Below are positions 4,276 to 52,004 of a stretch of DNA of 64,000 nt, one piece after another. The notes beneath the pieces are model-generated. The model had not been told where the DNA came from and searched no databases. It saw nothing but the letters and a program-made list of their open reading frames with translations. This DNA comes from Isurus oxyrinchus (lineage: Eukaryota). Position numbers and translations under genes: made by a program. The DNA is taken from the NCBI GenBank assembly GCA_026770705.1, contig JANJGN010000042.1, positions 4,464,001 to 4,528,000 on the forward strand, given 5' to 3'. How positions within the stretch are numbered: position 1 is the first letter of the stretch; each line of letters opens with the position of its first letter.

Positions 4276-5186
4276 TCACCATTTCAAGAATTTAAGCATT
4301 AGACTCACTGGATATTTCAACCCATTCTTTATCATCTCCCTGATTTTACTCTGCGTCCCTACATATATAAACGGGTTAATACAGGAACTCAAAAGCTGAA
4401 GCATAAAGCCACCTTCCTCCAGAATGAAATTTGATTCTTCATAATTGCAACCCGAGAAATAGCTAACATTCTGAATTTGAACGCAGAGGAATGTCATAAT
4501 AACTAACAGATATAACAGGATGAAACTTCCAGAGACACAGAAAAGTAAAACAATGGATTTTCGCCTCTTCTCCATCTCTGGGTCCCCCTGATCATCATCA
4601 TTGCTATAGCCCTGGAGTCTCCTTCGGGCTCTACTGGCCGCTACAATGTGTCTCACAGTGAGAGCATTGAACAGTAAAATCAGAATAAATGGGAGACAAG
4701 GAGTTAAAAGGACAATAATCCAGTCAAATGCGACCCAAGCAGGTGACGTATAAAATATTGCTTTTATATTGCAGTACCAGGGTATATGGTTAATGAAAAA
4801 GGCAGGTTCATAAGTGAAGTACAGTGGGATATTTCGGACACAGTTCAGAATGCAGACAGCTCCAATAACCATAGCAGCTGTTTTCTCTGTGCAATACTTG
4901 GTTTTCAACTTCTGGCAACAAATGGCAACAAATCAATCCATGGTGAAAGCGACAGTTACCCAGACAGACGAATCTCTGACTCCATAAATTAATGTAAGAT
5001 GCAATCTGCAGGACGGAGTGATAAACAGGAAGCTGAATGGGAAATAAATACCTACAATCCGGTTCAATATCACAGCAGTGATAATGACCAGGAGATCTGT
5101 TACCCCCATGAAAACTAGGTAATAAGTGATGCATTTGGAGAGACCACATCTTCCTCGAGAAAGGATCATAATCACTGCGAAATTAG
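4276..5186 (-). pseudogene. GPR139/GPR142-like class A GPCR copy A, exon 2, with one in-frame TGA (4935-4933) at the DRF arginine
   Basis: Acceptor tctctttttcacag|CT at 5187/5186. Reads ANFAVIMILSRGRCGLSKC...SVWVTVAFTMD*FVAICCQKLKTKYC...DPEMEKRRKSIVLLF...NPFIY...SKIRE...W*. ORFs 4933..5175 and 4276..4908 are in the same frame, separated only by the TGA and 8 sense codons. Confidence 0.93.
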
Positions 5187-6344
5187 CTGTGAAAAAGAGA
5201 CATAGCCAGTGAAAAAATGATTGAGAAAAAGGTCAGCAGAGCAGAAAATGTTGGAGATACTCAGAGGTTGTTGAGCACTGCAAAGGGATAAACGTCTGAG
5301 CTTTTCAGGTCATAGGCTTTCCTTATGACTGGAGAAAATGAAACCCTCCTTATATGTAGCAAACCATCAACACTGAATTCTGCTGTGAGGAAGAATATGG
5401 TGTCAGCCCTATAGTGGACAGTGAACTTGCTTCTTTACGATGCAGTTACAGAAAATAAACTCAATTTAATTTCTCTCAATGCATAAAGAAGAGCGAAGAC
5501 AAGAACAGTTCAAGACATTGGCCAATCTAAAGAGCACTACTCTATCGACTGGGGAATTGAGCAGAAATGCAAGACATGACATTGAATGAAAAGAAATAAA
5601 AAAATGCTTCACGTGAGGACAAAATGCCAGGCTGAGACTATGACTAAAATGAAAATAAACTAATTTGCATGGAAATTGAAAGGAAACGTAAACTTCTGAT
5701 TGATAATGATCGCAAGCCAGCCCATCAATGCTTCACAACAACCAGCAAAGCAATTCAACCAGCAAAGTTTCAGCTTCAGGTCAGGTTAGCAGTGTTCTCA
5801 CTTCTGAGCAGAATTTGCGGGTACAAGTGTTGCTGCAGAACTCGAGTGATGGAAGAGTTTTGTCCTGCCAGGGGCACCGTGTTTCAGGCAAGATTATGGA
5901 CTGAGGACCCATCTAATAAGATAAATGTAAAGTCTGCACCGATCTGGTAGATAGCTGCTTTCGTTTTCCACTGCAAGGGAGAAAGTATACGATCGGAAAA
6001 TCCAACAGTTGTGTTGATAAATTAATGGTTCTCCAAATACAGTGTATTAATACCCATACGGGGGCAGTGGTAGTAAAACAACTGAAGTAAAATTAAACAT
6101 TAATAAAACTGAATATTCACTGTCAGCAATGCTGTTACAAACATAACAGAATTGCATTTGCACCTTGAAATGGTAGCGGTAAATGGAAGAAATTATATAA
6201 TTTAGAGGATAAAACGGTGCTGGTCACTTTTCAACAAGGTGGGTAAACCATTCTAGTCGCAGGGCGCTGCAAAATTGGCGACATTTCAACAGTAAGTACG
6301 GATATTTATGTCAGTAAATGGAAGACGTATTGTTAACGGCAGGT

Positions 6345-6430
6345 AACCATCACCTTCTCATGGGGAACTAGGGATGGACAATAAGTACTGGACCAGCGAG
6401 AGACGCCCGCATCCCGTGAATGAAAAAAAA
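6345..6430 (+). repeat. Isolated LINE/SINE 3' tail in the intron of copy A
   Basis: ggggaactagggatggacaataagtactggaccagcgagagacgcccgcatcccgtgaatgaaaaaaaa matches the tail at 22220-22280 and 41150-41215. Confidence 0.75.
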
Positions 6431-6653
6431 ACTAAACTGGAAAAAATCATACTTTAAAAGGGGAAGCATTGTACACAATAAAGGGGAAGACCCATTAAAA
6501 GGGAAAAGTTGCTCTGTTAAGGGTGAAAAAGAATATGTGTACCGGTAGAACAGCAGTACTGCTAAATGAAAGGAGTAATCAAGTAAAGTCAGAAGATGAG
6601 AGAAGTGGTTAACCAATGAGTTCAGTAATGAACCAGTGACTAAAATACTTTAC

Positions 6654-6723
6654 CTGGAACCCCGATTGCGGCGACGGTGGGATAGTAAATGGCAAAGAAC
6701 AGTCCTCTTGGTATTCCATGCAT
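6654..6723 (-). pseudogene. GPCR copy A, first coding exon (MHGIPRGLFFAIYYPTVAAIGVP)
   Basis: ATG at 6723, 70 nt, phase-1 donor CCAG|GTAAAG at 6654/6653. It joins in frame to 5186 (G|CT = Ala); 70+911 = 981 nt = 327 codons. Confidence 0.92.
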
Positions 6724-6773
6724 TTCTGTCACAAGTGGAGAATGTGATTTATACTATTCTGAAAAATTGTCAC

Positions 6774-6810
6774 ATTTATACCTAATGTCAGGCTCCTGGG
6801 AAATAATGAG
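6774..6810 (-). promoter_or_regulatory. Putative proximal promoter of copy A: homeodomain core, O/E-like site and TATA
   Basis: Plus strand CTCCTGGGAA (6793-6802) lies next to TAATGA (6804-6809). TATAAAT is on the minus strand at 6780-6774. The layout is homologous to the region upstream of exon D. Confidence 0.5.
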
Positions 6811-7769
6811 TCGTTCTGATCTTGCACAATAATTACAGTGATTGAAGCAAACAGATGAGTAATGATGTTAATGTTTTGAAGGACAGGAAAGTATTTTTCA
6901 CTGATGCTACTCTAAAATGGAATCAATGCAAAATACAATAAGATGCTAGAAGATAATTAATAAATAAAATAGACATGTGCAATCGTGAAAACGAGCATTG
7001 TACAAGCGGAATCCCTCAAGAATTACTCAAGTTGATTCAACATAATGTATAACTGACTAGAGGTCTGAAAGGCTCATATAGCCAACTTCTAGCTCCTGAA
7101 CATTATTCAGCCCATGTGATCACTGATAAAGTTGCAACGTGGGTCCAAATCTCCCTGAGACTGCAAACCCACTTTACCAAAGTGGTCTGTCTATGCAGTT
7201 CTACTCCAACATATTCTCCGTGCAAAGACTTAGTTCTTTGTGATTACTTCCGGTGCCCACTTTCCCTGATAAGTTTAATCATGTTCAATGTTTAGAATTA
7301 TGGTGAACAACAGCAGTCCAGTAAATTTACTTTCAATCATGACAATTCCAATTCAGTTCAGCACAGTTACATGCATTGTGCACAGCTTCAGTTAATCATG
7401 GCTTTATTCAGTGTGCTCAAGCCGGATTCAGCACGGTAACTGTAGGAATGAGCTGTCTCACCTCACTGGGATTATAGTTAGCCTGAAAGAAGGGCAGAAC
7501 ATGCTGGAACAACTTCACATGAATTCTAGCACCTATAGGCGTGCAAGCTGTGGGATCTGATGAATATTTCCATCATGCTAAGGCCTGTTTTGCTGTTATG
7601 ATTTCAGATTTCCAACATCAGTTATAGACGGCTTTTATATTTTGTATGAACAGGATTAGTTTAGTAAATATTCACTCAGTGTTAACATAACTAGTTTAGC
7701 ACAGTTACACTCCTTGTACCGAAGCCGAATTATGTAAAACAACATTGTGTCTGCTCTGATCTTCTTCAA

Positions 7770-8380: not shown

Positions 8381-8439
8381 ACAGACCTCTTTTTAAATCA
8401 CTCTGTTAAATTGATAATCTGATGGTGGTGAGGGCGTGG

Positions 8440-9910: not shown

Positions 9911-9929
9911 TATTTGGAACCTAAACAGA

Positions 9930-14194: not shown

Positions 14195-14231
14195 CTAATT
14201 GCCCCTCTAGCGTTGAGCATTAGATATAAAT
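14195..14231 (+). promoter_or_regulatory. Putative proximal promoter of copy B
   Basis: CTAATTGCCCCTCTAG (14195-14210) is identical to 42777-42792 upstream of copy E. TATAAAT is at 14225-14231. Confidence 0.6.
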
Positions 14232-14292: not shown

Positions 14293-14362
14293 ATGCATGC
14301 TCCAGGAAATGGACTAGTTTTTGCCATTTATTATTCCACTCTTGCTGCTTTCGGAGATCCAG
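14293..14362 (+). pseudogene. GPCR copy B, first coding exon (MHAPGNGLVFAIYYSTLAAFGDP)
   Basis: ATG at 14293, 70 nt, donor CCAG|GTAAAC at 14362/14363. Same length and phase as exons A, D and E. Confidence 0.9.
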
Positions 14363-16107
14363 GTAAACTTTTGCCTGAAATGAATAACTGGACAATTCAA
14401 TCTTTAACAGTGCCATCTATGAGTTGCTGATTGCTTACCACAGAGGTCAGGCTTTTTCTCTCCGCTGCTGTATCAGCATTGTATTCCATCACTGCAATAA
14501 CATTACTCTCTACTACGTGCCTTCTATGCTCCCTTGTTGCAAGATTAATTGAATTCCGCGTGTAAAATCAGGAACCCAGATAGAATATAATTTTTCTGTG
14601 GATTATTGTGAGGAAATTGTGCTCTCCAACATGCTGTAGCATGTCCAAGACGCATTAAAGTACATTCAGGTCTAAGGCCAGCTCTGGAATTGCATAATTT
14701 TATACACCCCTCACAGTTCCATGGATATTCTCCTTGCTTTGACGTTCTTCCAACTCAAGCTTTCCTTAAATGTGAACGGTACAGATAGTTGTAGATGAAA
14801 GAAATGCACAAGAAATATTTAAAAACATGGTATTAATATTTTTGGCAATGCAATGCAATGCACTATGTGTACAAGGGGTTTAAACTAGGTTAGAAATACT
14901 GCAGCAGGTTGAAATGATTATTTTCTTTCTGTTGTTGTTTCCATCCTGACAGAAGCTGCTTGTAACTCGTTGAGCATTTTCCGCCAATTTTGTTTGCACT
15001 CCTCAGATTTGTAGTTGCTAATATTGCATGGAGTGCTGTTATAATACCATATAGTCGATGATCTGCTCTGACGACCATGAATTGTCCCTGATATCCTCGA
15101 TTAACTTTAACTGCTTCAGCCAATCTACCAAAAAGTGTATGTTATTTTCCAGTGTTTATACGATCTCTCAGAGGCGAAATTCACTCTTCACATAATCAGT
15201 CACTTTGCTTCCCTGAAAAATATTGTCAAATCATGCTGCAGCATCAAAGGCAGCAAGTTTGAAATCCGCTCAAGATCCCGAATCTGTAATCAAGCCCCGC
15301 ACTCCCGTTGCATTGTTGGTGAATTGCAACATGGACAGGCCTGTCGTTCTGAGGAAAAGTTGAATGGGTGTCGTTCTGCTTCTTCGATTACAGGAAACTC
15401 GTGACACTGTTAGAAGATCAGATGTTTCTGTCTGTGAGCAATAAAGAGCAATCTACGGGCAAGATATATCGAATTTAGTGCAGAGGAATCTCTAATCTCC
15501 CTCCCTACTATAGCAGGATCTCACTGAAAGCAGCTTCCATTAATGTACATTAGTGTACTGCAAAATAACTGCCGATCCTCCTTGACTTACTTCCACAGGA
15601 GTAGAGGCCGCATTCAACCAACATTATTGGTGCAAGGCTTTCTTTTCCTCAACCTTGAACCTTAATGATATTTATTAAAACCTTCTGATTAACCATATAT
15701 TATTTCTATCATTTGCTTCATTCCACTTTTATTCGTGTTCTTCTGCAGTTCTTATTGTGATCATTTACTATGATTTATTATGAATCAACGCGTTGTATTT
15801 TATTACAATTACTTTTATGTTAACGTTGCTATTTCGTCCATTAGTGCCTTTATAAATTATGTTCCTTCTACTTTCTAATATATAAGGTTTGCATGAATCT
15901 AAAAGAAAGAAAAGTTACATTTTCTTTTATGCTTGACATTCCAGTTTTATTTGAAACAGTCATTTGCTTTGTTGAACAAAGTGCAATGCATTGATTAAAC
16001 ATTCAGTTTCAGCGTTGATTAGTGCAAATATCATATTATCCTGCCGTCAAAGTAATGTTGTAGCTGCGATTCGGATTACGACTTCCGTCCTTCTCTTTGT
16101 TTAACAG

Positions 16108-16985
16108 CTAACCTAGAGACGATTGTGATCCTACCCCGAGGAAGGTGAGGTCTGTCCAGATGTATCACTTACTACTTGGTATCCATGGCGGTGATGGATC
16201 TCCTTGTCATTATTACTGCTGTGATGTTAAGCCGGCTTCGCACTATCTTTTCCAACTTAGTTTCCTCTCCATTACCCCTGCCTGCTGCTTAGTTATTGTC
16301 CTCAGCTGCACTTCCGGAGACAGTTCTGTCTGGTTAACAGTCGCGTTCACCTTCGATCACTTCTAGGCATTTTTCTCCCAGCAGCTGAAATTGAATTACT
16401 GCACTGGTTAGTGGAATGGTCTGTCTGCTGTTCTGCTAGAAAAACTCCCCTTTTTATTTCATATATGAACCTATGTATATCAATAACTTACCATGACAGT
16501 GCAGAATTAAAGGAATCATTCATAATTCCGTCGCATGGAGGCTGCCTGCCTGTCTGGACCGTATTCAAACTCCATGTCTCCCTTTCATCCTGATTTTTCT
16601 GCTCAATATACTGACAGCCAGAGATATTCTATCAGCCAGTCGAGCCCGGGGGAGACTCCGAGCCCAAAACAATAGACAGAATCAAAGCGACCCAGAGATG
16701 GAGATCTGCAGAAAGTCCATCAGTTTACTTTACACCATCTCTGGTAGTTTCCTTCTGCTTTGGTTGACATATGTTGTAAATTTCCTACTTCTGCAAATTA
16801 CAGTCAACAACTATTCAGTAGGTTCTAATTCCAATGACCCGAAATTTATTCTGAAGGAAAGCGGGTACATCCTTCAACTCTTGAGTTCCTGCACCAATGC
16901 ATGTATTTATGCAGGGACCCAGAGTAAATTCAGAGGAGAGTTGAAGGATGCAGTTAAATATGCTATAAATCTAATTAAGAAATAA
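16108..16985 (+). pseudogene. GPR139/GPR142-like GPCR copy B, exon 2, multiply disrupted
   Basis: Acceptor tttgtttaacag|CT at 16107/16108. Reads ANLETIVILPRGR*GLSRC (TGA 16146-16148), then a frameshift near 16245-16260 and DHF* (TAG 16364-16366), with a deletion near 16407. The tail DPEMEICRKSISLLYTISGSF...NACIY...SKFRGEL is intact to TAA at 16985. Confidence 0.93.
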
Positions 16986-23760: not shown

Positions 23761-23812
23761 GGGTGGGGGGGGGGGGGGGGGGTGGGGGGGGGGGGGTGGG
23801 GTGGGTGGAGGT
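23761..23812 (+). repeat. G-rich low-complexity tract (potential G-quadruplex) inside degenerate CR1 sequence
   Basis: Nearly pure G run punctuated by T; it produces the poly-Gly and poly-Pro ORFs 23661 and 23670. Confidence 0.8.
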
Positions 23813-24670: not shown

Positions 24671-25500
24671 TCATTTAACAATCCAGCACATGCCTTAGTT
24701 CTTTTGCGCAACTTCCTCTGACTCCATCCAGAATTACATATGTTGTTGCAGCGGCTCAGGAGCAGCAACATGTCCCCGCTTCCTTTAGCACTAAACTTGG
24801 GGTAATTTAATTATAACATGTGAGATATGAACTACTGCAGTTAGCTCATCTACAACGCTTACAATCATACTGCCCACAGCAGCTGCCTGAAGGGTAAAAT
24901 GACTGAATTTATCTGGTTCTCCGTCTCTGGCTCCCTCTCATTCTTCCCATTGCTTTTGGTGCTACAGAGTCCAGCAGGTTTCACCATCAGCGAATTGAAT
25001 GCATGGAAGATTAAACATTTGAGATAAATAATGAAAGAAATGGAATTAAGTGGCTAAAACACGATCGACCTAGTCGGTTCTTATTCCTGCAAATGAAATA
25101 TAAAATTCTAATTCTATTCTTCCAAATGAGTAACGTTGTTACTGACCTCCAGGATTCCTGTACAATTTATCTCTGATTTTTGTTTTCATCTTCTTAATGG
25201 ATGCAACGAACCTAGGGGCATTTCTCCGAGAGGAATATTGCAACTTCATATTCGGGCAACAAACACAAATGTATCCACCGAAGGTGAAAGTGACTGATAA
25301 CCAGACAGAACAATCCTCAGGTTGTATATTGAGTGTCGTGCTGACGTCATCGGCTTGTCTGGTGAACGCTAAACTAACCCACGCATAAATACCAGTCATT
25401 GAATACAAGCAGCAGCGATAACATCATTTGTTTTGTCGTTGCCATGAATGCGGAGTGATGCAACTGGAAAGAACACCGCCCCCTCGAGAGAGGACCGCAA
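24671..25500 (-). pseudogene. GPR139/GPR142-like GPCR copy C, heavily degraded exon 2
   Basis: Colinear minus-strand remnants: AVLSRGGGVLSSCIT, DCSVWLSVTFTFGGYICVCCPNMKLQY, NEREPETENQINSVILPF (cf. NQSDPEMENRRKSIVLLF) and PKFSAKGSGDMLLLLSRCNN...QRKLR (cf. PKFILQESGNVLQLLSCCTN...QSKFR). Confidence 0.85.
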
Positions 25501-26029
25501 AGGAGAATAATCATCATTTTTTGCGGACCAGAAAATAGCAGGATAACTGCTGCTCAGACCGAGAACAATAGCATCAGATTAGAAGTACTCACCTCGATGT
25601 TTGGAGATTTCTTATATAAATATGTAAAGTTATGCTGTCATTCCTGGAGTAATTTGTGATTATTAACTGGATTTATCTTCTTCAGTTGAAGTTATTATTC
25701 CTATATTTCGAACGTCAATTGCATAAATAGAATGTTTGATTTGAAAGGAGTCAAATCTATGCTGAAGTTGCAAAGCGGCACCAAATTACTGCAAAATGCA
25801 ATGGGACGAATTTCCAACTGAAGGATTTTCAGTTATTTGGCCGGGACGGTGAAAGAAATCTTCTCTCCCATAGAAATAAACCTTGAACATTCTGTATATG
25901 GTGAATTTCCCTTTCTTTCTTGCTGAACCGATCACGGTCACCAATATACATTGCATCCTGGTTCCTCCCTTCCGACGAATCCCATCCTAATTTCCAACAC
26001 TGCTCCCATTCAAATACATCTCAATTCCT

Positions 26030-28461: not shown

Positions 28462-28670
28462 NNNNNNNNNNNNNNNNNNNNNNNNNNNNNNNNNNNNNNN
28501 NNNNNNNNNNNNNNNNNNNNNNNNNNNNNNNNNNNNNNNNNNNNNNNNNNNNNNNNNNNNNNNNNNNNNNNNNNNNNNNNNNNNNNNNNNNNNNNNNNNN
28601 NNNNNNNNNNNNNNNNNNNNNNNNNNNNNNNNNNNNNNNNNNNNNNNNNNNNNNNNNNNNNNNNNNNNNN
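28462..28670. other. N-run (gap or hard-masked simple repeat)
   Basis: 209 N, with tctaaccac on both flanks. Confidence 0.95.
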
Positions 28671-33055: not shown

Positions 33056-33077
33056 CTAATTATTTGCCTGGAGCCTA
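33056..33077 (+). promoter_or_regulatory. Putative promoter remnant of orphan exon D
   Basis: CTAATTATTTGCCTGGAGCCT aligns with copy A upstream (CATTATTTCCCAGGAGCCT on the minus strand) at the same distance (~-87) from the ATG. Confidence 0.5.
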
Positions 33078-33142
33078 TGGAGAGGTGTAACATTGTGCAA
33101 TTTCCAGTAGATTGTAGAACGCACGCAGAGCTTCGGTTAGAA

Positions 33143-33212
33143 ATGCACGGGTTAACAACAAGCCTGGTGTTTGCCATTTAGTATCCCGTAATTGGAGCTA
33201 TTGGAGTTCCAG
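33143..33212 (+). pseudogene. Orphan GPCR first exon D (MHGLTTSLVFAI*YPVIGAIGVP)
   Basis: ATG at 33143, 70 nt, donor CCAG|GTAAAG, TAG at 33179-33181 in place of Tyr. No exon 2 was found before the next first exon at 42870. Confidence 0.88.
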
Positions 33213-35850: not shown

Positions 35851-35864
35851 CTGGAGAGAGAAAA

Positions 35865-42620: not shown

Positions 42621-42776
42621 GGAATTATGAAGAGCTGTTATGAAAAACGCCTTCCAGTTTCTAAAAAAAGAAACAATTTTTTTCTCTAAAATATACATTT
42701 ATTAAAACAATTTGTTAAATGATTGTCTGACCATCTTTCTTCAAATGATTGGAACTAATGAACTCGATGTTGTCAT

Positions 42777-42813
42777 CTAATTGCCCCTCTAGAGATTAGC
42801 TGTTTGTATAAAG
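42777..42813 (+). promoter_or_regulatory. Putative proximal promoter of intact copy E
   Basis: CTAATTGCCCCTCTAGAGATTAG (first 16 bp identical to copy B) at -93 from the ATG; TATAAAG at 42807-42813. Confidence 0.65.
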
Positions 42814-42869
42814 AATTAGAATTTGCCACATGGCATCTGACAGGACTTTAAGCTCTTGGCTATACGAGA

Positions 42870-42939
42870 ATGCATACTCCGACCAATAATCCTGTCTTTT
42901 CAGCAGTGTATCCTGTTATTGCAGCTCTTGGTGCACCAG
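42870..42939 (+). CDS. GPR139/GPR142-like class A GPCR copy E, coding exon 1 (MHTPTNNPVFSAVYPVIAALGAP)
   Basis: ATG at 42870, 70 nt, consensus donor CAG|GTGAGT at 42939/42940. It joins in frame to 51097 (G|TC = Val) and is homologous to exons A, B and D. Confidence 0.88.
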
Positions 42940-44437
42940 GTGAGTTATTCAAACTACTTTGACCGGCGTAAAAATCTTTGTTAAACTGATTTCGTGTTTG
43001 TGCTGCGACTCCACGGTGTTCACCATCTTCTTTTCAATGTTCCATAACTTATCATCTCTCCAAATTTATCTGTCCAATGGTCTGAATGCTATTGCCTTCC
43101 TATGTGCACTCAAAATTTAATTCTTCTGAAATTTCTAACTTCCTTAGACTCCAACATAAGTATTAATATGTAACAGAAATGACAGCTTGGCCATTTCGTT
43201 CCAATTCTTTCCCATGAGTTGATTTAACCTTGTTCTTAAACTCTCAGCTCGAAATATACATCACCTATAATTGGAAAAACAGCATATTGATATAATACAG
43301 CTCCTAATGCATATTGACATTTCCGTTCTGTCTGCATTGGCATGACTCGTGAACTGGCATCTTTGAAGTCTGATATATTAAACTATGCCATGTTATATCT
43401 AAACAGCCTATAATACAATGCAGGTGATGGCGAATGTGCTGCAGTTAGTGTTGCTTTCAATTCCACTTTGATTTGATTCAGCAATGACAACACTTCCGAA
43501 CTCACAACTTGTGAAGTTTTTGCAGGCGTTTAATGCATAATTCGAATGGCCATTCGTTCTGTACATGAAACGGTGAAACTGCTGTTTTTAGACTACCAAT
43601 TATTGAGTAATCTTCAGTCAAGGAAGCAGCTAAAAAAAAACAGCTGATTAAATAAGTATTAAGTGAAATAACCGATTCATTAAGTGTCCGAAATAATTCT
43701 TTAAACACAGTTTATGAAACAGTGTTATTTGTGAATGTGAAAATAACTAATGAATAAATGAACGTTCGACTAATCATATCGATCGTGTTACACACACACC
43801 TCTGTCCACAATGATCGGTTCTATTGCTATTTGTCTCATGTTCCACCTTGGTACAAAGTTAGCTGCCCTTGACATCTCTCCAGCTCAACAATTAATACAC
43901 CAATTCTTAGAATGGTGAATAGAATCATGACATTTGACGGGAGAAGAGGGGGCATTTTGGACCATCATGAAGACAGGTGTTTTGAAGGGATTCATTGAAG
44001 AGCTTTAGGGGAAGACCTGGACTGTGGGAGTTATTGGGATGTTGTCTTTTTTCCTGTACGATGTTATAATGCCATGATAAAATTTCGTTTTGCATTTTTG
44101 TTGCATTTATCATTGCTTCTGTATGTAAGCTACTGCTGTTTGTTTTCAATCACCAAACTGTTGCAAATATCTCGCAAGTAATGGAAATATTCTTTGAAAC
44201 TTTGCTTCAAATTACTGCACTACTCGTGACATCCAGGACACGCTTTTGCTCTGGCTACAATATTTATACTCTATGACTCAAACCCTGCCTCGTATTTGCT
44301 GCTGTTTCCCGATGTGGTATTACAGCCAATTATAAGTCTCCTGGCTTTGTACCATGAAGGCTCCGGTTGATATTTGCATGTTCTCTGCTGAGCTTGTGTA
44401 TTCTCGCTGTTTGTACTCGTGTCAGATTCTGTTTAGG

Positions 44438-45030
44438 AACATAGAAACATGGGATCAGAATCGGCTATTCCGCCCCTCGAACCTCTTCCGTCTGTTGACT
44501 AGATCTGAGGTTGATCTTCTACCTCAAAGATTTTTCTTTTAATGTCATTGGTGCTGAGAAATCAATCGAACTCTGGTTTGAACATATTGAATGATGGAGC
44601 CTCCACAGGCCTCAAGGGTAGACAATTTCAAAGACTCACCGCGCTCTGACTGAATAAATTCTCCCTCATCTCTGCCCTAAGTTGCCTCCCTTTTGTTTTC
44701 AGACTCTGTCCCCGGCCCAAGACCATCCCAGCTAGGGAAACATCTTGCCTGCGTTTTGTGGCCTGGAAGAATTCTGCACACCTCAATGAAGTCACCTCCC
44801 ATTCCTCTAATCTCCAGACAGAACAGACCCTATTTTCCCATTCTCTTCTCATAGAACGATGCCACCATCCCAATGAATAGCCTGTTTATCTACAGCTACA
44901 TTCCCTCTATGGTGTATATATCCCTCCTCAGACACGGTGACCAATACTGCACCAACTCTCCTTCGTTGGTCTCATCAAAGCTCTTTTTTAACAACTGCAG
45001 GAAGACGTCTTTGCTCCTGCACTCAAACCC
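44438..45030 (-). mobile_element. CR1-type LINE 3' end (intronic)
   Basis: Tail aacatagaaacat at 44439; ORF reads RGQSLKTKGRQLRAEMRENLFSQSAVSL. Confidence 0.85.
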
Positions 45031-45369
45031 TCTTGCCTGTTCTGAACAGAATGCAATCCCCACTGACGAAAGAACGAATAGCTGCTGCTTCAGGGCTTGA
45101 CAGACTTTTCACTATCCTCCTCAACTGCACATTCTGTTTCTGACTGTGCAAGTACTGGATTCTTTATTTTTTCTTTTTCTGACGAAAATACTTCTATCAG
45201 GGTGAGCTCTGACATTCAATCCTCAAATCTCTTAAATACATCTGTCACTTCCCCTGTCCCTGAACTCAAAATGGAGCTCCTTGATGTTCCATGCTGACTC
45301 CCTACTGAGGACACCCTGTTAAACTTTCCCCTCATTCTGCTGACTCTGCTGACCCTGCCAGCGGGGAGA

Positions 45370-46440
45370 TGTGCAAAATGTCTATCCAATTGTGAACAAC
45401 ACACTTGTCGTTCATGAACGTCTCATGGATGAACACCTCGGCATGTCTGCCTGACTGGAAACGTGGCTGAGGGAAAGGGGCACCATGCCACGTAATGAAG
45501 TTCACTCCACAAAACTCCCAGCTACATCTATATGACATGCTGAGGGTCGACCATCGTTGTGGTGATGTTGCACTTATCACCAGGTCACTACAGTTCGTGA
45601 CTGTGGACATGTCTGGTACATTATCATCCCTTGGAGCATTTCACGCTGTTTCCTCCAGCTCACACTTCCTTCAAAATCAAAATTCTCCATCGCACTTCCG
45701 AGGTACATTTGGCTTTGCCTCCTTTACACCCTGCACCATCCACGCTCATCTTCTCACCCTTACTACTTTCTAGATAATCACATCCTCTCACTCGTTTCAG
45801 TTCACTGCCCTCTTATCATCCCTATGTCCATCAGGGAAACTTAAAAACCCATAATTACAGGACCTGGATCTTGGCATTTGAAGTCGCCTTGCTAAACGCA
45901 TTTGTATCAGAGGCAAATAAGAGATAATTTTGCTGTGTTGCTCAAAACCCACAGCCCTCCAAGCCCAAGCAGCGTCCCTCTTCAGCCTGGAACCATGGAC
46001 AAATATGCATCCATTGACTTATATGTTCACGTTCAACATCCCAGCTGTCGAGTATTTTGTTGCTTCTTCTCCACAACATTTTCCCGCTGTTATTTCCCAC
46101 AATTGCATTCTCCACCCCGTCCACCTTATACGTCCTCGCTCTAAATGAAAAACAAAATCATCATTCTGCATGCCTTTTGTTTTTTCCCGGGAACAGCCCT
46201 CATTCACTTCTACAAGGACAATGGCAGTGGACTGAAGCTTAATGGCTGACAACAGACTCTGCTTTCGACCATCAGATAAAATCGATCAAAGTATTAATGG
46301 ATCCTGCTCTCATTTGCTTACACTGCGCGCTATTCTCTCATCATCATAGAATGCAAACATAACCATTCAGTCGTTTTTCTGCTGCCGTTTCTTTAACCAC
46401 TCCCTGCTTTCCTTTCCGTCCTATTCTCCAAATGTAAGTG
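45370..46440 (+). mobile_element. L2-like LINE endonuclease/linker remnant (intronic)
   Basis: ctgactggaaacgtggctga (ETWL-like) and cgttgtggtgatgttgcacttatc (RxGGVAL-like) in C/T-rich sequence typical of L2. Confidence 0.55.
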
Positions 46441-46859
46441 TGAGTACAATATTGGTGTCTTTGACATGAAGATTCAGAAAATATTATCAGTTTTCTCCGT
46501 TGCATTCCTTACTTCCGTAAGAGCACCAGACAGAGCGTATTATAATAGTCCTCTGCCAACACTTGTAACAGAAATCTATCTCATTTTTTTCTCCTATATA
46601 CTGTCATATCTTTTGACAATTCACCTTTCTCCATTACACCCACCTCCTTCTCCTTTGATTCCATCCCCAATGAAATGCTGACTAACTATGTATATGTCCT
46701 CAGAGAACAATACCCGTAATGGTGTAGCAGCAGGGAGATAAGACTTTGGAAGTGATTCTCCGGCTACGATTACAGAGCTAAGTGCGGACCAGGTAAGAGT
46801 GCTCTCTCTCACTCCACTCCCGGACCCAAGCTGGAAGACAAAGGCAGACTTTTGAACAG

Positions 46860-47945
46860 TGGCCCCGAGCTGTAGAATATCCTACGTGGGGAACATACCC
46901 TCCACAACCACCCAGTCAAGTCCCCTCGGAATCTTATGTGTTTTAATCAATTCATATTTTACATTTCCACGCTCCAGCAGATACAAGCCTATCCAGCCTT
47001 TCAATAGAAAGCAACCCGCCCATTCCAGGTATTGACCAGTAAAAAAACCTATGAACTGCATTTACATTTTTACCATGCAAGGGGACCAAAACTGCACACA
47101 AATGTGGTCTCATCAACGTCCTATATAAATGAAGCATAAACTCTATAACCCTTAATTAAATAGCCCTTGCAATAAATGATAACATTGATAGAATCACAGA
47201 GTCACAGGGCGGAAGAGGCACTTCGGCCCATCGGGTCAGCACTGTTCCATTAGCTTTGTCACTTACTTGCTGCACCTGCACACTAATCTTTTTTTTGGTG
47301 AAACATGTACTAATACATCCAGGTCCCACTCCAAATATGAGCTCTTCAATCTCTCACCATTTCGATAATATGCCTCTTTATTAATAGTCATGGTAAAATG
47401 AAGAACCTCAAATTTTCCCACATGCTGCTCCATTTACCTCATCTTTTTTCCCACTCACCTAGATTATCTGTATGCTTTGGTCAGCTCCTTATGTCCTCTT
47501 CAGAAATAACTTTCCTTCTAGTTTGTGCCCTTACAAAATTCAGCAGCAATATTATCGCACCCTTCATCCAATTGATTGATATAAATTGAAAAGATTTGCG
47601 GCCCCAGTGCTGAATAATGTGGGAAACCACTCGTCAGATCATGCCAACTAGAAAATGATCAATTTAAGCCTACTCTCAGTTGTCTGTCATCCAGCCAATT
47701 TTCTATCCATGCCAACATATTACCCTCTGCACCATGAGATTTTATTTTCCACAATAAGCTATGATGAGTGATCTGAACAATGTCTACGAAAATCAAAGTT
47801 CAAGACATTCACAAGATCCCCTTCTCCACATACCTATTACTTACTCGAAGAACTGGAAATTGGTTAAGCATGATTTCCCTTTCGCAAAACTATGCAGATT
47901 CTGCCTGATTATGTTTAATTCATCTATGTGCCCCGTGATAATGTC
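46860..47945 (-). mobile_element. CR1-type LINE fragment (intronic)
   Basis: ORF reads MLHLYRTLMRPHLCAVL...GMGGLLSIERLDRL; homologous to 34800-35780. Confidence 0.8.
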
Positions 47946-47994
47946 TTAACGAAGTTCGCCGCATAATTCTCCTCCAAAACGACTTCACTAACTT

Positions 47995-48300
47995 CCGGTT
48001 CCTTGGGACTAATCCCACTTGGTTCCGTAATTATCTATTTAATCGTCAGCACAGTAACAATTGCAAGGACTTTTCTATCCCTCCCGAACTGTTACCTCTG
48101 GAGTCCTCCAAGTTTGAGCCTTGACACCACCACCCACAACCCCTCTCCTTCCAATTCTTCTTCACAGGTTATTGCTTCGCTACATCACCCAGAAGCACTG
48201 AGTTATTTTAAATTCTACGCTGCTGACACCAATCTCTTCCCCAACACTACTTCTCTCGACTCCATGACAGTTGTTAAATCATCAGGCTTCTTATTCGATG
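47995..48300 (+). mobile_element. L2-like RT remnant (intronic)
   Basis: tggttccgtaattatcta...cgtcagcac (WFxxYLxxR), gttacctctggagtcctccaag (VTSGVxQ) and FKFYAADTNL (cf. YADDTQL). Confidence 0.65.
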
Positions 48301-48499
48301 CCAGCACCAGATGGACAGGTACTTCCACTAAATAAACTTGGGACTGCACATTGCAATCTCAGTCCTAAGCGACCGACTCCATCCCGCCCCCTGTAAAGAG
48401 CGTTGTTTTAAGCCGTTCTCTTCACAAATGTATAACCACATTCGATCTGAGATGAGTTTCCAAACGTATATCTGTGCCACGACTCAGACTATTTATTTC

Positions 48500-50295
48500 C
48501 ACAGAAACACAGAATAAGACAGTGCAGAAGATGAAATTGGGTCCATTGAGCCTGCAGCAACACGTGAGAAAAACGTGACCTACCTACCTAATCCCATTTA
48601 CCAGCACTTGGCCCATAGCCTTGATTGCTATGACATGCCAAATACTCATCCAGGTACATTGAAAGGATGTGAGGCACCCGCCTCCACCAGCCTAAAAAAA
48701 GCCAAAAAAAATGCGGATGCTGGAAATCCAAAACAAAAATAAAAATACCTGGGAGAACTCAGCAGGTCTGGCAGCATCTGCCGAGAGGAACACACTTTCG
48801 CGTCCGAATGATTGCAATAGACCTAAGTAAAAATAGAAAAGAGGTCAAATATAAGCTGGTTTAAGGGGAGTGGGGTGGGACAGGTAGAGCTGGATAGAGG
48901 GCCAGTGATAGGTGGAGATAGCCAAAAGATGTCATTAGACAAAAGGACAAAGAGGTGTTGAAGGTGGTGATATTATCTAAGGAATGTGCTAATTAAGGGT
49001 AGAAAGCCGGACAAGCAAGGTACAGATAGCGCTAGTGGGGGTGGGGTGGGGTGAAGGGAAGGGATTGAAATAGGCTAAAATGTAGAGATTAAATAAATGG
49101 TTGGAAATGTATTTTAAAATAATGAAAATAGGTGGGAAAAGATGAATCTATATAAATTATTGGAGAAAAGAGGGGGATCGGGAAGGGAGTGGGAATGTAC
49201 GAGAGAATTCATGATCTAAAATTGTTTTATTCAATATTCAGTCCAGAAGGCTGTAAAGTGCCGAGTCGAAAGATGAGGTGCTTTTCCTGTAGTTTGCGTT
49301 GAGCTTCACTGGAACAATGCAGCAGGCCAAGGACTAAGGGCATGAGATCAGGGTGGAATGTTGAAATGGCAAGCGACAGGGAGGTCTAGGTAATGCTTGC
49401 GGACAGACTGAAGGTATTCTGCAAAGCATTCACCCAGTCTGTGTTTGGTTTCTCCAGTGTAGAGGAAACCTAATTGGGAGTATCGAATGCAGTAGACTAA
49501 ATTGAGGGAAGTGCGAGTGAAATGCTGCTTCACTTGAAAGGATTGTTTGGGCCCTTGGACGGTGAGGAGAGGGGAAGTAAATGGGCAGGTGTTGCAACTT
49601 CTGCGGTTGCATGTGAAGGTGCCGTGGGAGGAGTTTGATGTATAGGGGGTGATGTAGGAGTGGACAAGGGTGTCCCAGCCTCTCAGGCGGTGCACTCTGA
49701 ACCGTCACCACCCTCTTGGTAAAGATATTCTTCCTCACAACCTCCCTAAACCTCCTGCTCCTCACCTTGAACTTATGCCCCCTTATAATTGACCTTTCAA
49801 ATAAGGGGAACAGCTGCTCTCTATGCACCCTGTCCATGTCTCTCAAAATCTTGTACACATCGATCAGGTTGCCTTTCAGTCTTCTCTGCTCCAATGAAAA
49901 CAACTGAAGTCTATTAAACATCTCTACATAGGTTAAATGTTTCATCCCAGGCAACATCCTGGTGAATCTCCTCTACACCCCCTCCAGTATAATCATATCC
50001 TTCCTATAATGTGGCGATCAGAACTGCACACAGTACTCCAGCTGTGGCCTCACCTGTTCATTATAACTCCAACATGTCCTGCCTAATTTTTGTAATCTAT
50101 GCCTCGATTGATAAAGGCAAGTGCCCCATATGCCTTTTCACCACCCCACTAACCTACCCCTCCACCTTCAGACATCTATGGATGCACACGCCAAGGTCCC
50201 TTCGTCCCTCTGAACTTCTTAGTGTCATGCTGTTCATTGAATACTTCCTTGTCAAATTACTCCTTTCCAAGTGTATCACCTCACACTGTTCATCA
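48500..50295 (-). mobile_element. CR1-type LINE 3' end split by a Penelope insertion
   Basis: ORF reads MLPGMKHLTYVEMFNRLQLFSLEQRRLKGNLIDVYKILR...FTKRVV. Segments 49675-50295 and 48500-48693 are contiguous when compared with 9930-10590. Confidence 0.9.
48694..49674 (-). mobile_element. Penelope-like element (GIY-YIG endonuclease end plus 3' terminus) with a 7-bp target-site duplication
   Basis: ORF 49348..49695 reads CNRRSCNTCPF...NLVYCIRYSQLGFLYTGETKHRLGECFAEYL...PVACHFN. CCAGCCT occurs at 48687-48693 and 49675-49681. Confidence 0.92.
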
Positions 50296-50539
50296 GTATG
50301 ATCACTCGATTTTGCCCCGGTCTCGGTGTATATGATACTCATACACTCATAAAAAACGCCTTTGTCTCAGACTAAACTATCAGAAAGGACGCATAGCTGC
50401 TCTCCCAAATACTTGCCTCCATGAAAATGAGGACTTAAAAACCCAAAGATGAGTCTTAATGCATTCAAAACAGAAAATCTCTTCCTCTCTTTAAAAATAC
50501 AGCCAAACCTGTTGAACATTTATAGAACGCCCTATTCTT

Positions 50540-50905
50540 GTTAACCTCTGATATCTATGTCTTAACTCACTCCACCCTATACTGCCTGTGTACGTTGGCC
50601 TCTGCTTGTTCTCACTCAATTAAAGCCTTGATTTTAAAATCATTGCAAATGTTTGCAAATCCTTCCATGAAATCACCACTCCCTATTCCTGCAATCCACC
50701 CCAGAACCACAACCATCCAAGATCAATGTGCTATACTAATTCTGCCCTCGTATACAACGTCTATTTGAAACACAACACGTTGTTTTGCGTTGGCTAGGCC
50801 ATAATCTCTGGAATTTGATCCTTGTCCCTCTCTGCTCTTCCCCCACTGTTTCCCCCATTAATGCACTCTTTAAAACGTACCTCTATGTCCTAGCCTGGTC
50901 CACAG
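50540..50905 (+). mobile_element. L2-like LINE 3' remnant (intronic)
   Basis: ttgattttaaaat...aaatccttccatg...ctctggaatt...cttttaaaacgtacctct resembles L2 3' ends. Confidence 0.6.
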
Positions 50906-51096
50906 CACACCTATAATGCTGTCGTATCTTTGGCATTTCAGCATTCCGGTTCATTTCATTTATACCTTAATTCCAGAAAAAATGTGCCATATTCCAGATT
51001 TATGATGTAACAGTGCTGTACATTTTAAAAATAAACAGTGGAACTGTTGTGGTCGCTCTCAGTCTCAACCCTTGTTTCCCTTTGCCACTCCTTCAG

Positions 51097-52004
51097 TCAA
51101 CTTAGTGGCGATTCTGATCCTAGCACGAGGAAGGTGTGGTCTCACCCGATGTATCACTCGGTACCTGATGTCCATGGCGGTGACGGATCTATTGGTGATT
51201 ATCACTGGAGTAATAGTGAATCGGATTGGTGGGTTTTATCTTCGCAGCAGTTTTTTGTTCCACACTCCGATGTGCTGCCTCAGTAATGCATTAGTTTATG
51301 CAGCCAGGGACTGTTCTGTCTGGTTAACTGTCGCTTTCACCTTTGATAGGTTTGTGGCGATTTGTTGCCCAAACCTGAAAAGAAAATATTGTACCAAAGA
51401 CAGTGCCACAAGGGTTATAACAATCATATGCTCCCTGTGTTGTTTAAAAAATATCCCCTGGTATTTTGTGTATGAACCTTTATATATAATGAACAACGTG
51501 CCGTGGTTCTGCAGTATCAAATTATTTTTCTACTCTTCACCCCTATGGGCAGCTTTTCACTGGATTGATCGTATTTTAACCCCTAGTATACCGTTCTTTC
51601 TGATTTTACTGTTCAATAATATGACTGTCGGACACATTCTGGTGGCTATTCGAGTCCGCAGGCAACTCCAGGTCAAAAGCGTTGTAGAGAATCAGAGTGA
51701 CCCAGAGATGGAGAATCGGAGAAAGTCCATCGTTTTACTCTTCACCATCTCGGGAAGTTTCATCTTACTATGGATGGTCTACCTTGTAGAATTTCTTTAC
51801 ATACGAATTACAAACGATTATTATTTTGCCGGCTCCAACACTGATGATCCGAAATTTATTCTTCAGGAAAGTGGAAATGTCCTCCAACTCTTGAGCTGCT
51901 GCACTAACACGTTTATTTATACCGTGACCCAGAGTAAATTCAGAGAGGAACTACAAAATGGTTTTAAAATTTTATTCAGAATACTTGCGAAACTCGTTCA
52001 ATAA
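51097..52004 (+). CDS. GPR139/GPR142-like class A GPCR copy E, coding exon 2 (intact; 325 aa with exon 1)
   Basis: Acceptor tttgccactccttcag|TC at 51096/51097. Open frame with class A motifs: N in TM1, AVTD in TM2, SVWLTVAFTFDRFVAIC, KSIVLLFTISGSFILLW, NTFIY and helix 8 SKFREEL. TAA at 52002-52004; AATAAA at 52012-52017. Confidence 0.95.

What the first reader, a model, noticed from the sequence alone, without database searches (positions are those of the whole stretch)
4276..52004. Birth-and-death cluster of GPR139/142-like receptors: candidate unrecognised chemosensory receptor family
Seen: at least five paralogous loci in 48 kb (one intact, one single-hit pseudogene, one multi-hit, one heavily decayed, one orphan exon), in both orientations and at graded stages of decay. 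Known: mammalian GPR139 and GPR142 are single-copy receptors activated by aromatic amino acids (Trp/Phe). From my recollection, GPR139 has a phase-1 intron at the same G-x-P|A-N position in TM1. Cartilaginous fish have small classical OR repertoires. Inference: tandem expansion, compact ~325-aa proteins and a high pseudogene fraction are typical of chemoreceptor (or immune-sensor) families, so this may be an undescribed amino-acid or small-molecule sensing repertoire.
Basis: partly seen in the sequence, partly recalled or inferred. Interest (0 to 1): 0.85.

Follow-up and report, generated by a model that had tools for sequence, protein, structure and literature searches.

The report
Shark orphan receptor gene cluster
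This stretch of shark DNA holds one intact-looking gene and four or five dead relics of a receptor family that has grown to over a hundred genes in sharks and rays and whose job, possibly smell or taste, has not been tested.

Summary
Between 4276 and 52004 lie four receptor gene bodies (A, C, D, E) and four promoter-plus-first-exon units (A, C, E and one orphan), on both strands. E is intact. A has a single TGA in its DRF motif. C has at least 5 stops and 2 frameshifts. D is badly decayed. The orphan first exon carries a stop and has no second exon. The assembly gap (28462-28670) lies in repeat-like non-coding DNA, touches no copy, and was left unfilled.

The genes are two-exon class A GPCRs with a phase-1 intron in TM1. 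They belong to a cartilaginous-fish clade that RefSeq auto-names "probable GPR139". I counted at least 121 protein clusters in Heterodontus francisci alone. The clade is sister to a gene that appeared once per species in amphibians and sturgeon. E is not the GPR139 orthologue (44.5 bits to human GPR139). A, C and E each have closer relatives in other shark orders than in each other, so the cluster is ancient.

The chemosensory idea stays untested. No RNA holder was found, and most pocket positions equivalent to GPR139's are conserved. My paper searches found no description of the family. The scan had already found this family on other DNA of the same genome.

The parts
4276..5186 (-). Copy A exon 2 (pseudogene). 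Open except for one TGA at 4933-4935, which replaces the Arg of the DRF motif.
   Evidence: HMM 494 bits. No difference at the stop is listed in the contigs of a close relative, but only 40 of 106 differences were shown.
6654..6723 (-). Copy A exon 1: ATG, 23 codons and 1 base, followed by a GTAAAG donor.
6775..6810 (-). Copy A conserved promoter block: a TAAT-type core, then a TATAAA box at fixed spacing, starting 87 nt before the ATG.
14195..14230 (+). Copy C conserved promoter block.
14293..14362 (+). Copy C exon 1, followed by a GTAAAC donor.
16108..16985 (+). Copy C exon 2 (pseudogene): 5 in-frame stops, 2 frameshifts (near 16245 and 16415), and DRF changed to DHF.
   Evidence: HMM 331 bits, plus 58 bits in the shifted frame
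24691..25513 (-). Copy D: a heavily decayed exon 2 relic. No exon 1 or promoter block was found.
   Evidence: (38.7 and 19.5 bits)
28462..28670 (.). Assembly gap. It lies in repeat-like non-coding DNA between D and the orphan exon, inside no recognised copy. Left unfilled.
33056..33091 (+). Promoter block of the orphan first exon (TATA degraded to TGTAAC).
33143..33212 (+). Orphan exon 1 with TAG at codon 13 (33179-33181) and a GTAAAG donor. No exon 2 lies downstream.
42777..42812 (+). Copy E conserved promoter block, starting 93 nt before the ATG.
42870..42939 (+). Copy E exon 1. Its first 10 residues are the same as in its Heterodontus relative P0002. A GTGAGT donor follows.
42940..51096 (+). 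Copy E intron, 8157 nt (A has 1467 nt, C has 1745 nt), inferred from the splice signals. There is no RNA proof.
51097..52004 (+). Copy E exon 2: intact, 301 codons plus stop. All family-invariant residues are present.
   Evidence: (520 bits)
52152..52250 (+). Possible sixth relic, resembling TM1-ICL1-TM2. Weak.
   Evidence: 1.3 bits, i-E 0.041

Best explanation
The stretch is one old tandem cluster of a cartilaginous-fish-specific, greatly expanded clade of two-exon class A G-protein-coupled receptor genes. The clade is distantly related to GPR139/GPR142. It is sister to an orphan receptor that appeared once per species in amphibians and sturgeon.

In this shark the cluster keeps one apparently functional gene (E). 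Four relics remain (A, C, D and an orphan first exon), plus perhaps a sixth fragment.

Shown here: the gene models, the lesions, the fold, the family size and the tree position.

Inferred: E makes a 7TM receptor of about 324 aa that binds an extracellular ligand in the usual helical pocket under a beta-hairpin ECL2, and signals through a G protein by way of its DRF and N-T-F-I-Y motifs. Across paralogues a mostly conserved polar set could anchor a common ligand moiety. That set is Y3x33, R3x36, D3x37, D5x43, Y6x51 and N7x38. More variable positions would then tune specificity: 3x29, 6x54, ECL2 after the Cys, and ECL3. This would make the family an array of related sensors for one chemical class, with amino acids or short peptides as the leading guess.

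Where the receptors are expressed is unknown. My odds are about 0.35 for external chemosensation, 0.3 for internal peptide, neuromodulator or immune signalling, and the rest open.
For: - Fold and class: Pfam 7tm_1 at 1e-19. The AF2 model has pLDDT 86.5 with helices and an ECL2 hairpin. Foldseek places it among class A peptide receptors, with GPR139 at ranks 20-25.
- Nearest solved sequence: human GPR139, but only 44.5 bits.
- Family size: 2314 proteins at E<=1e-5, and all 120 listed are elasmobranch. 1435 proteins at E<=1e-10 for A's piece. Counting by hand, 49 + 69 new + 3 = 121 Heterodontus clusters.
- Tree position: the careful tree of 45 rows puts all 30 chondrichthyan rows in one clade (97/88). 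Its sister is the amphibian plus sturgeon clade (100/100). That relative appeared once per species in 20 of 20 amphibian species listed, at 66-74% identity to the newt query.
- Age: A, C and E fall in three separate starred subclades with Heterodontus partners.
- Conserved residues: D2x50, C3x25, the ECL2 Cys, D and R of DRF, N7x49 and Y7x53 are invariant in 109 of 109 rows.
- Variability: the extracellular half has mean entropy 1.18 bits against 0.70 for the intracellular half, Mann-Whitney p = 3.5e-9.
- Health of E: E departs from the family at 6 of 108 conserved columns (family median 3, 90th percentile 7). It is 96% identical to an intact Carcharodon protein.
Against: - No transcript evidence. 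None of the 8 listed RNA-guessed runs holds E's words, and the one laid on A's locus gave nothing. E's splicing and expression are therefore inferred.
- E's intron is 8.2 kb, five times that of A and C. The white-shark model of its orthologue starts at an internal Met and lacks exon 1.
- E sits toward the high end of departures from conserved columns.
- The common-anchor reading of the pocket rests on numbering transferred from one HMMER alignment to GPR139 and on a paper about a synthetic agonist (PMC8807744). No ligand is known.
- True GPR139/142 sequences could not be put in the tree.
Confidence: 0.8

Rival explanations
1. External chemosensory repertoire. The family would be expressed one or a few per cell in olfactory, taste or solitary chemosensory cells. 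It would detect waterborne amino acids, peptides or similar cues, making up for the tiny OR, TAAR and ORA repertoires of sharks.
For: - The family is large and clustered, with many pseudogenes.
- Variability is concentrated in the extracellular half.
- Catshark has only 2 OR, 6 OR-like, 3 ORA, 3 TAAR and 2 TARL genes (passages of PMC11979771).
- All 4 exon-1 units carry a promoter block with TAAT-type cores and a TATA box at fixed spacing. It is more alike than flanking DNA in 2 of 6 pairs (z = 8.9 and 5.0; controls about -0.7).
- GPR139 and GPR142 respond to L-Trp and L-Phe (PMC8807744 text; PMC12844162 passages).
Against: - There is no expression evidence.
- PMC11979771 says the 50 most specific genes of the catshark 'brain & olfactory epithelium' library include no GPCR.
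- Core paralogues are 60-75% identical, with mean entropy 0.97 bits. Most GPR139-equivalent pocket positions are held in 70-95% of members, which is less diverse than OR pockets as I recall them.
- The O/E-like element noted elsewhere in the scan is at best a half-site here. Against the recalled TCCCNNGGGA consensus it has 2-4 mismatches, by reading the sequences.
Confidence: 0.35
2. Internal signalling receptors. The family would be an expanded set of peptide, neuromodulator or immune-cell receptors, comparable to MRGPR, FPR or chemokine-receptor expansions, co-evolving with endogenous or pathogen-derived ligands.
For: - The nearest structural neighbours are neurotensin, CCK, galanin, ghrelin and TRH receptors, and the model has a peptide-receptor-like ECL2 hairpin.
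- GPR139 is a brain receptor also reported to respond to alpha-MSH (PMC8807744 text).
- Automatic names given to members include chemokine-, FMRFamide-, capa- and TRH-receptor-like.
- The bony-vertebrate sister appeared once per species and is well conserved, as for an endogenous system.
Against: - I know of no matching expansion of a ligand family.
- More than 100 paralogues with a high death rate is unusual for endocrine receptors.
- There is no expression evidence either way.
Confidence: 0.3
3. Dying cluster. In this lamniform lineage the local cluster has no remaining function, and E is an unexpressed gene whose open frame has simply not been hit yet.
For: - 4 of the 5 loci are dead.
- E has an 8.2-kb intron and 6 of 108 departures at conserved columns.
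- Only 1 of 120 and 2 of 120 listed relatives are from Carcharodon, against 49 and 84 from Heterodontus.
- No Carcharodon protein is closer than 66% to A.
- No RNA was found.
Against: - E's 301-codon exon 2, splice sites, start codon and promoter block are all intact.
- Its Carcharodon counterpart is also open and 96% identical, 10 differences in 276 aa. That is fewer than I would expect from unconstrained drift, given the 2-4% DNA divergence seen in a close relative. This is a rough inference, because the relative's identity is coded.
- Annotation depth differs between species, so the protein counts are not gene counts.
Confidence: 0.1
4. E is the true shark orthologue of GPR139 or GPR142, and the others are its local duplicates.
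For: RefSeq names the family 'probable G-protein coupled receptor 139'. GPR139 is the best solved-structure sequence hit.
Against: - E scores only 44.5 bits to human GPR139, at 21% identity in the structural alignment.
- E scores higher to the amphibian (139 bits) and coelacanth (110 bits) relatives. Those relatives are themselves weak matches to GPR139, at 53 and 70 bits.
- E nests deep inside a clade of more than 100 paralogues per species.
- R6x51 and H5x43 of GPR139 are Y and D here.
Confidence: 0.01

Closest known systems
Human GPR139 (PDB 7VUG/7VUH/7VUI/7VUJ, 9M42; PMC8807744)
   Same: - It is the best solved-structure sequence match.
- Both are class A receptors with an ECL2 hairpin.
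- Both lack Pro at 7x50 (GPR139 N-F-F-L-Y, this family N-T-F-I-Y), read from the alignment.
- W6x48, N7x38, L7x42 and an aromatic residue at 3x33 are shared.
   Different: - The match is only 44.5 bits and about 21% identity.
- R244(6x51) is Y, H187(5x43) is D, I112(3x36) is R, E108(3x32) is I/V/T, and P6x50 is T/V.
- DRY is DRF.
- GPR139 is single-copy and conserved (recalled), whereas this family has over 100 paralogues.
GPR142, the aromatic amino-acid sensor (PMC12844162 passages)
   Same: It is GPR139's close paralogue (reference title seen), so it belongs to the same wider group. It senses L-Trp and L-Phe, which is the basis of the amino-acid guess.
   Different: It has no solved structure in the PDB hit list. 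No GPR142 sequence was available to me, so nothing was compared directly.
'Probable GPR139' paralogue of amphibians and sturgeon (P0225, P0395-P0414)
   Same: It is the nearest non-chondrichthyan relative: 32-33% identity, 139 bits to E. It is sister to the shark clade at 100/99. Its length is similar, 339-356 aa.
   Different: One protein per species was listed in 20 of 20 amphibian species, at 66-74% identity to the newt query. There is no expansion. Its function is also unknown.
'GPR210A/B' orphans of coelacanth, gar and fishes (PMC6504862, passages)
   Same: That paper lists GPR139/142-related orphan subtypes in coelacanth, gar and fishes. Coelacanth P0240 with teleost P0246 forms the next outgroup to the shark plus amphibian clade.
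   Different: I could not check whether P0240 is one of the Ensembl proteins named in the paper. The paper does not cover cartilaginous-fish expansions in the passages I saw.
Expanded class A sensory families (TAAR, OR, MRGPR, FPR)
   Same: They share the genomic behaviour: tandem clusters, many pseudogenes and lineage-specific bursts. As in TAARs (recalled), a conserved charged pocket set might anchor a common ligand moiety.
   Different: There is no sequence membership: only 7tm_1 matches in Pfam. The coding sequence has two exons. No sensory expression has been shown.

Membership tests
Class A (rhodopsin-like) GPCR | Match to Pfam 7tm_1 above the gathering score | tested here: met
   E scores 71.5 bits and A's piece 42.6 bits, against a cut-off of 30.5.
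Class A (rhodopsin-like) GPCR | Seven-helix bundle with helix 8 | tested here: met
   The AF2 model of the exon-2 product (pLDDT 86.5) shows the end of TM1, TM2-TM7 and H8. Exon 1 supplies the start of TM1. 1139 PDB matches at E<=0.001, and all 49 listed are GPCRs.
Class A (rhodopsin-like) GPCR | Signature residues: D2x50, the C3x25-ECL2 Cys pair, D/ERY, CWxP, NPxxY | tested here: met
   D2x50, both Cys, D and R of DRF, N7x49 and Y7x53 are present in 109 of 109 rows. Variants: F at 3x51 in 94 of 109, no Pro at 6x50 (T in 69 of 109), and T at 7x50 in 89 of 109 (P in 19).
GPR139/GPR142 proper (orthologues) | High sequence identity to the mammalian receptor, as one conserved gene per genome | tested here: not met
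   44.5 bits and 21% identity to human GPR139. At least 121 paralogue clusters in one species.
GPR139/GPR142 proper (orthologues) | Ligand-contact residues F3x33, H5x43, W6x48, R6x51, N7x38 (PMC8807744) | tested here: not met
   W6x48 and N7x38 are kept, and 3x33 is Y. But 5x43 is D and 6x51 is Y, both in E and in most paralogues. The numbering was transferred by hand from the alignment.
GPR139/GPR142 proper (orthologues) | Activation by L-Trp / L-Phe | not testable with these tools
   This needs a receptor assay.
Chondrichthyan 'probable GPR139' expanded clade | Nests inside the clade in a tree with the nearest outside relatives | tested here: met
   E, A and C each sit in a starred subclade. 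All 30 chondrichthyan rows form one clade at 97/88.
Chondrichthyan 'probable GPR139' expanded clade | Protein of about 325 aa from two coding exons, with a phase-1 intron at G-x-P|(A/V)-N | tested here: met
   Met for A, C and E in the window. Database members are mostly 320-330 aa. The gene structure in other species was not checked.
Vertebrate chemosensory receptor repertoire (functional class) | Expression in chemosensory cells | not testable with these tools
   No RNA holder was found, and X9 laid nothing on A's locus. The tissue of those runs is not known to me.
Vertebrate chemosensory receptor repertoire (functional class) | Large clustered repertoire with a high pseudogene fraction | tested here: met
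   4 of 5 loci here are dead. The family exceeds 100 in Heterodontus.
Vertebrate chemosensory receptor repertoire (functional class) | Ligand pocket hypervariable among paralogues | tested here: inconclusive
   The extracellular half is more variable (1.18 against 0.70 bits, p = 3.5e-9). But 8 of 11 GPR139-equivalent contact positions have entropy under 1.3 bits. The sample is biased toward E's nearest relatives.

The most novel reading that the evidence does not exclude
The expanded clade is a previously unrecognised vertebrate chemosensory receptor family. In this reading the receptors are descended from a GPR139-related ancestor and tuned to amino acids or small peptides. They would be expressed in shark and ray olfactory or taste cells from a shared homeodomain-site/TATA promoter, and would supply the receptor diversity that the near-absent OR, TAAR and ORA families do not.
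Probability: 0.3. Interest if true: 0.85.

Novelty: new variant of a known kind. Interest (0 to 1): 0.55.

Why it matters
Sharks are known for acute chemical senses, yet they have only a handful of OR, TAAR and ORA genes (PMC11979771 passages). A family of over 100 class A receptors is annotated in RefSeq as "probable GPR139", and none of my seven paper searches turned up a description of it. That makes it a concrete candidate for the missing receptor diversity, and it can be tested directly by in situ hybridisation or single-cell RNA-seq in catshark or skate.

Even if the receptors act internally, the family would be one of the larger lineage-specific class A expansions in vertebrates. It would also give context to the orphan GPR139/142 group, which is a drug-target family.

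This window adds three things: clean two-exon gene models, a graded series of decay, and evidence that the paralogue lineages in one cluster are older than the shark orders. It is one of many such clusters, and the scan had already met the family elsewhere in this genome.

Tried and rejected
- **Tree with true GPR139/142.** No tool gave me those sequences as stored proteins. The 150 best 50%-identity representatives stop at 72.7 bits, above GPR139's 44.5. A search from the coelacanth or newt relative would not reach them either. I used bit-score comparison instead.
- **Expression.** The look-up of sequencing runs found no RNA holder. Read laying on A's locus gave DNA-like contigs 2-4% different from the window and nothing from the RNA-guessed run X9. 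These are contigs, so absence is not proven.
- **Whether A's stop is shared by the relative.** No difference is listed at the stop, but only 40 of 106 differences were shown, so this is suggestive only.
- **Foldseek** cannot separate GPR139 from other peptide-type class A receptors.
- **The ESM Atlas** only repeated the automatic names.
- **D's first exon and promoter.** The N-terminus scan, the HMM and the promoter pattern with 1 mismatch all found none.
- **An exon 2 for the orphan exon.** None lies between 33213 and 42776.
- **An O/E (Ebf) site in the promoter block.** Read against the recalled consensus TCCCNNGGGA, the four blocks have 2-4 mismatches, so I do not call it an olfactory-type promoter.
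- **The promoter pattern count** (4 hits against 0.04 expected) is circular, because the pattern was made from those four sequences. The shuffle-scored alignment is the independent check, and it supports only the pairs A-orphan and C-E.
- **Other content.** Rfam found no RNA family. There is one G-rich tandem repeat. Pfam matched 1 of 10 other long ORFs, a reverse transcriptase.
- **Papers.** GPR139+shark gave 4 papers, none relevant. A mixed six-term search was dominated by unrelated papers. GPR139/GPR142/expansion gave the 'GPR210' passage. 'coupled receptor 139'+expanded returned 10 papers; by their titles and abstract openings two are mollusc genome papers and the other eight are unrelated to fish or sharks. 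'GPR139-like' gave 0. 'coupled receptor 139'+shark gave 1, a snail genome. elasmobranch/orphan/GPCR gave nothing relevant. Subscription journals are not covered.
- **Supplementary files.** The expression tables of PMC11979771 may hold values for catshark family members, and the supplementary tables of PMC8807744 hold the mutagenesis data.

Full report
**What is in the window**

A tblastn of the open copy E against the window found strong matches at 5190..4282 (-), 16056..16982 (+) and 25393..24703 (-). Three later scans refined this to five loci: a scan with the N-termini of 98 full-length relatives, a tblastn with one relative, and a family HMM over all six frames.

- **A** (-): exon 1 at 6723..6654, exon 2 at 5186..4276. 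It is open except for one TGA at 4935..4933, where the family has the Arg of DRF.
- **C** (+): exon 1 at 14293..14362, exon 2 at 16108..16985. It has 5 stops and 2 frameshifts. The shifted stretch still reads as the family's TM3 in another frame.
- **D** (-): 24691..25513. It reaches only 38.7 and 19.5 bits, carries several stops, and has no first exon.
- **Orphan first exon** (+): 33143..33212, with TAG at codon 13 and a good donor, but no second exon before E's promoter.
- **E** (+): exon 1 at 42870..42939, exon 2 at 51097..52004, fully open.

A weak sixth fragment lies at 52152..52250 (i-E 0.041).

In A, C and E the intron is phase 1 between G-x-P and (A/V)-N, with GT..AG ends. E's first exon was assigned for two reasons: its first ten residues equal those of P0002, E's nearest non-lamniform relative, and no other first exon lies before 51097. 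Its intron is 8157 nt, against 1467 nt in A and 1745 nt in C.

**The gap**

N runs lie at 28462-28670, 56037-56193 and 56337-56488. The first is 2.9 kb from D and 4.5 kb from the orphan exon. No HMM hit adjoins it, and both flanks carry the same short motif. It interrupts no recognised copy, but it leaves the D-to-orphan distance uncertain and could hide D's missing first exon. I did not fill it.

**What the genes are**

E's exon-2 product matches Pfam 7tm_1 at 1e-19. Its best solved-structure sequence match is human GPR139, but weakly, at 44.5 bits. An AF2 model built with 70 aligned sequences has pLDDT 86.5. It shows the helices, an ECL2 beta-hairpin and helix 8. Foldseek ranks neurotensin, CCK, galanin and TRH receptors first, with GPR139 at ranks 20-25 and similar scores. 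The fold therefore says "peptide-type class A receptor" and no more.

**Family size and range**

The large protein collection holds 2314 relatives at E<=1e-5. All 120 listed are from sharks, skates and rays, mostly 320-330 aa, and nearly all are auto-named "probable G-protein coupled receptor 139". The best is a Carcharodon protein at 96% identity, so the window comes from a lamniform or near relative.

By my hand count, 49 of the 120 are from Heterodontus francisci. A second search with A's open piece listed 84 of 120 from Heterodontus, 69 of them new. A third search added 3. That makes at least 121 clusters at 90% identity in one species. These are proteins, not genes, so some may be isoforms.

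The all-against-one search of 50%-identity representatives gave 110 clusters at E<=1e-30 and 218 at E<=1e-10.

**Relatives outside cartilaginous fish**

The nearest are a newt/axolotl protein (32%), a coelacanth protein (33%) and a teleost protein (30%). Searching from the newt protein found one protein per species in 20 of 20 amphibian species listed, at 66-74% identity. A sturgeon protein followed at 46%, then elasmobranch proteins at 32-33%. That search works from a word index, so absence elsewhere is not shown.

None of these is GPR139 itself. The coelacanth and newt proteins score 70 and 53 bits to human GPR139.

A careful tree of 45 rows that I chose (IQ-TREE, LG+C20) puts all 30 chondrichthyan rows in one clade (97/88). 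That clade is sister to amphibians plus sturgeon (100/100), and the pair (100/99) is sister to coelacanth plus teleost. The root was set on eight unnamed distant proteins. True GPR139/142 were not available to me.

PMC6504862 (passages) names GPR139/142-related orphans of coelacanth, gar and fishes "GPR210A/B". I could not check whether they are the same proteins.

**Age of the local copies**

A, C and E are 45-57% identical to each other, but 74%, 73% (over the 193 columns used in the tree) and 76% identical to Heterodontus proteins.

A quick tree of 129 rows was built from 126 labelled database proteins of 295-350 aa and three window rows; 13 labelled proteins outside that length range were dropped. 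In it, E, A and C sit in three different starred subclades. Several subclades hold both sharks and batoids. The paralogue lineages therefore predate the shark orders, and some predate the shark-ray split. What the window shows is old lineages dying in place, not recent duplication.

A's clade is greatly expanded in Heterodontus. No Carcharodon protein is closer than 66% to A, which fits A being dead in lamnids too.

Contigs of three DNA-like runs of a coded close relative differ from the window by about 2-4%. They cover A's stop, and no difference is listed there, but only 40 of 106 differences were shown.

**Sequence features**

The alignment holds 108 close database members plus E. D2x50, C3x25, the ECL2 Cys, D and R of DRF, N7x49 and Y7x53 are invariant. 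3x51 is F in 94 of 109, 6x50 is not Pro (T in 69), and 7x50 is T in 89 and P in 19. Reading the alignment, GPR139 also lacks Pro at 7x50.

I transferred GPCRdb numbers from that alignment and from PMC8807744 (first of three parts read). On that basis the positions that contact the GPR139 agonist are here Y3x33, R3x36, D5x43, W6x48, Y6x51, N7x38 and L7x42, with D at 3x37 alongside. Each is the majority residue in 70-95% of paralogues. GPR139's R6x51 and H5x43 are not kept.

Mean entropy is 1.18 bits in the extracellular half and loops, against 0.70 in the intracellular half (p = 3.5e-9). Restricted to the TM helices it is 1.10 against 0.62. The most variable sites outside the tail are 3x29, the ECL1 side of TM2, ECL2 after the Cys, the top of TM5, 6x54 and ECL3.

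I read this as a conserved anchor plus a variable rim. That is an inference, and any GPCR family has more variable loops.

An ICL3 motif is nearly invariant even with the outgroups included: D201, E203, R207, K209 and S210 in exon-2 numbering.

E departs from the family at 6 of 108 highly conserved columns (median 3, 90th percentile 7). It differs from the Carcharodon protein at 10 of 276 residues.

**Promoter**

Earlier notes of this scan on other DNA of the same genome describe a fixed homeodomain/O-E/TATA layout before such genes. Here all 4 of 4 first exons are preceded by a 36-nt block with a CTMATTR core and a TRTAAM box at identical spacing, starting 87-98 nt before the ATG.

Scored against shuffles, the -130..-41 region is clearly alike only in the pairs A-orphan (z = 8.9) and C-E (z = 5.0). 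Two upstream controls and one deep-intron control are at z about -0.7.

The O/E-like part is a poor match to the consensus as I recall it. The block looks like a real shared core promoter in two subtypes. Nothing here shows that it is olfactory.

**Expression**

No listed run holding E's exon 2 is on record as RNA. The eight RNA-guessed runs of the related organism hold next to none of its words. One of them laid nothing on A's locus. Function in any tissue is therefore untested.

PMC11979771 (passages) reports tiny OR, ORA, TAAR and TARL repertoires in catshark. It reports no GPCR among the 50 most specific "brain & olfactory epithelium" genes, and it does not mention GPR139 (0 occurrences).

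**Verdict**

It is wrong about recency, and it is unproven about chemosensation. I put external chemosensation at about 0.35, an internal peptide, neuromodulator or immune role at about 0.3, and a locally functionless cluster at about 0.1.

The family is annotated, but my searches found no paper on it. The scan had already found it on other DNA of this genome: 142 notes mention GPR139, and one follow-up reached the same reading.

Noticed in passing
window 52152-52250 (+): Just after E's stop there is a short stretch that reads like the family's TM1-ICL1-TM2 (I-L-S-x-x-x-C-G-x-S-x-C-x-T...). It may be a sixth, almost erased copy. The HMM gives i-E 0.041.
   Followed up: partly
window 35738-36250 (+): A reverse-transcriptase fragment (Pfam RVT_1, 3.9e-07) lies where the orphan exon's second exon would be expected. 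Retroelement insertion or replacement may have removed that exon.
   Followed up: partly
window 49430-49957 (-): An ORF inside E's long intron has an N-terminal part that looks, from my recollection, like the C-terminal end of a CR1-type LINE ORF2. Pfam gave no match.
   Followed up: no
window 56037-56193 and 56337-56488: Two further assembly gaps lie outside the finding. They were not examined or filled.
   Followed up: no
window 4100-6900 against runs X1-X3: The only public runs holding this DNA differ from the window by about 2-4% (for example 34 differences in one 964-nt contig). They come from a close relative or a divergent population, not from the window's own sample. One run also shows a 1-base deletion at 4353 in part of its depth.
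   Followed up: partly
window 6775-6810, 14195-14230, 33056-33091, 42777-42812: The promoter blocks fall into two subtypes, A with the orphan and C with E. These do not follow the protein tree, where A and E are closer. That hints at promoter exchange between neighbours, or at an old promoter dimorphism.
   Followed up: partly
proteins P0303-P0388 (Heterodontus francisci, contig of 59,489,666 nt): A's subclade has dozens of members on a single horn-shark scaffold. In the window's lineage the same subclade is represented by one dead gene. Gene birth and death differ strongly between shark orders.
   Followed up: partly
E exon-2 residues 198-210 (window about 51690-51728): The ICL3 motif N-Q-S-D-P-E-M-E-x-R-R-K-S is nearly invariant across the family and its bony-vertebrate relatives. 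It may be a coupling or phosphorylation signature worth testing.
   Followed up: no
proteins P0176 and P0385: Two family members come from short JGI metagenome contigs (1.6-1.7 kb). Shark or ray DNA is therefore present in some public metagenomes.
   Followed up: no
window 23761-23805: A G-rich tandem repeat with a 19-nt unit and 2.4 copies lies about 0.9 kb from D's end.
   Followed up: no
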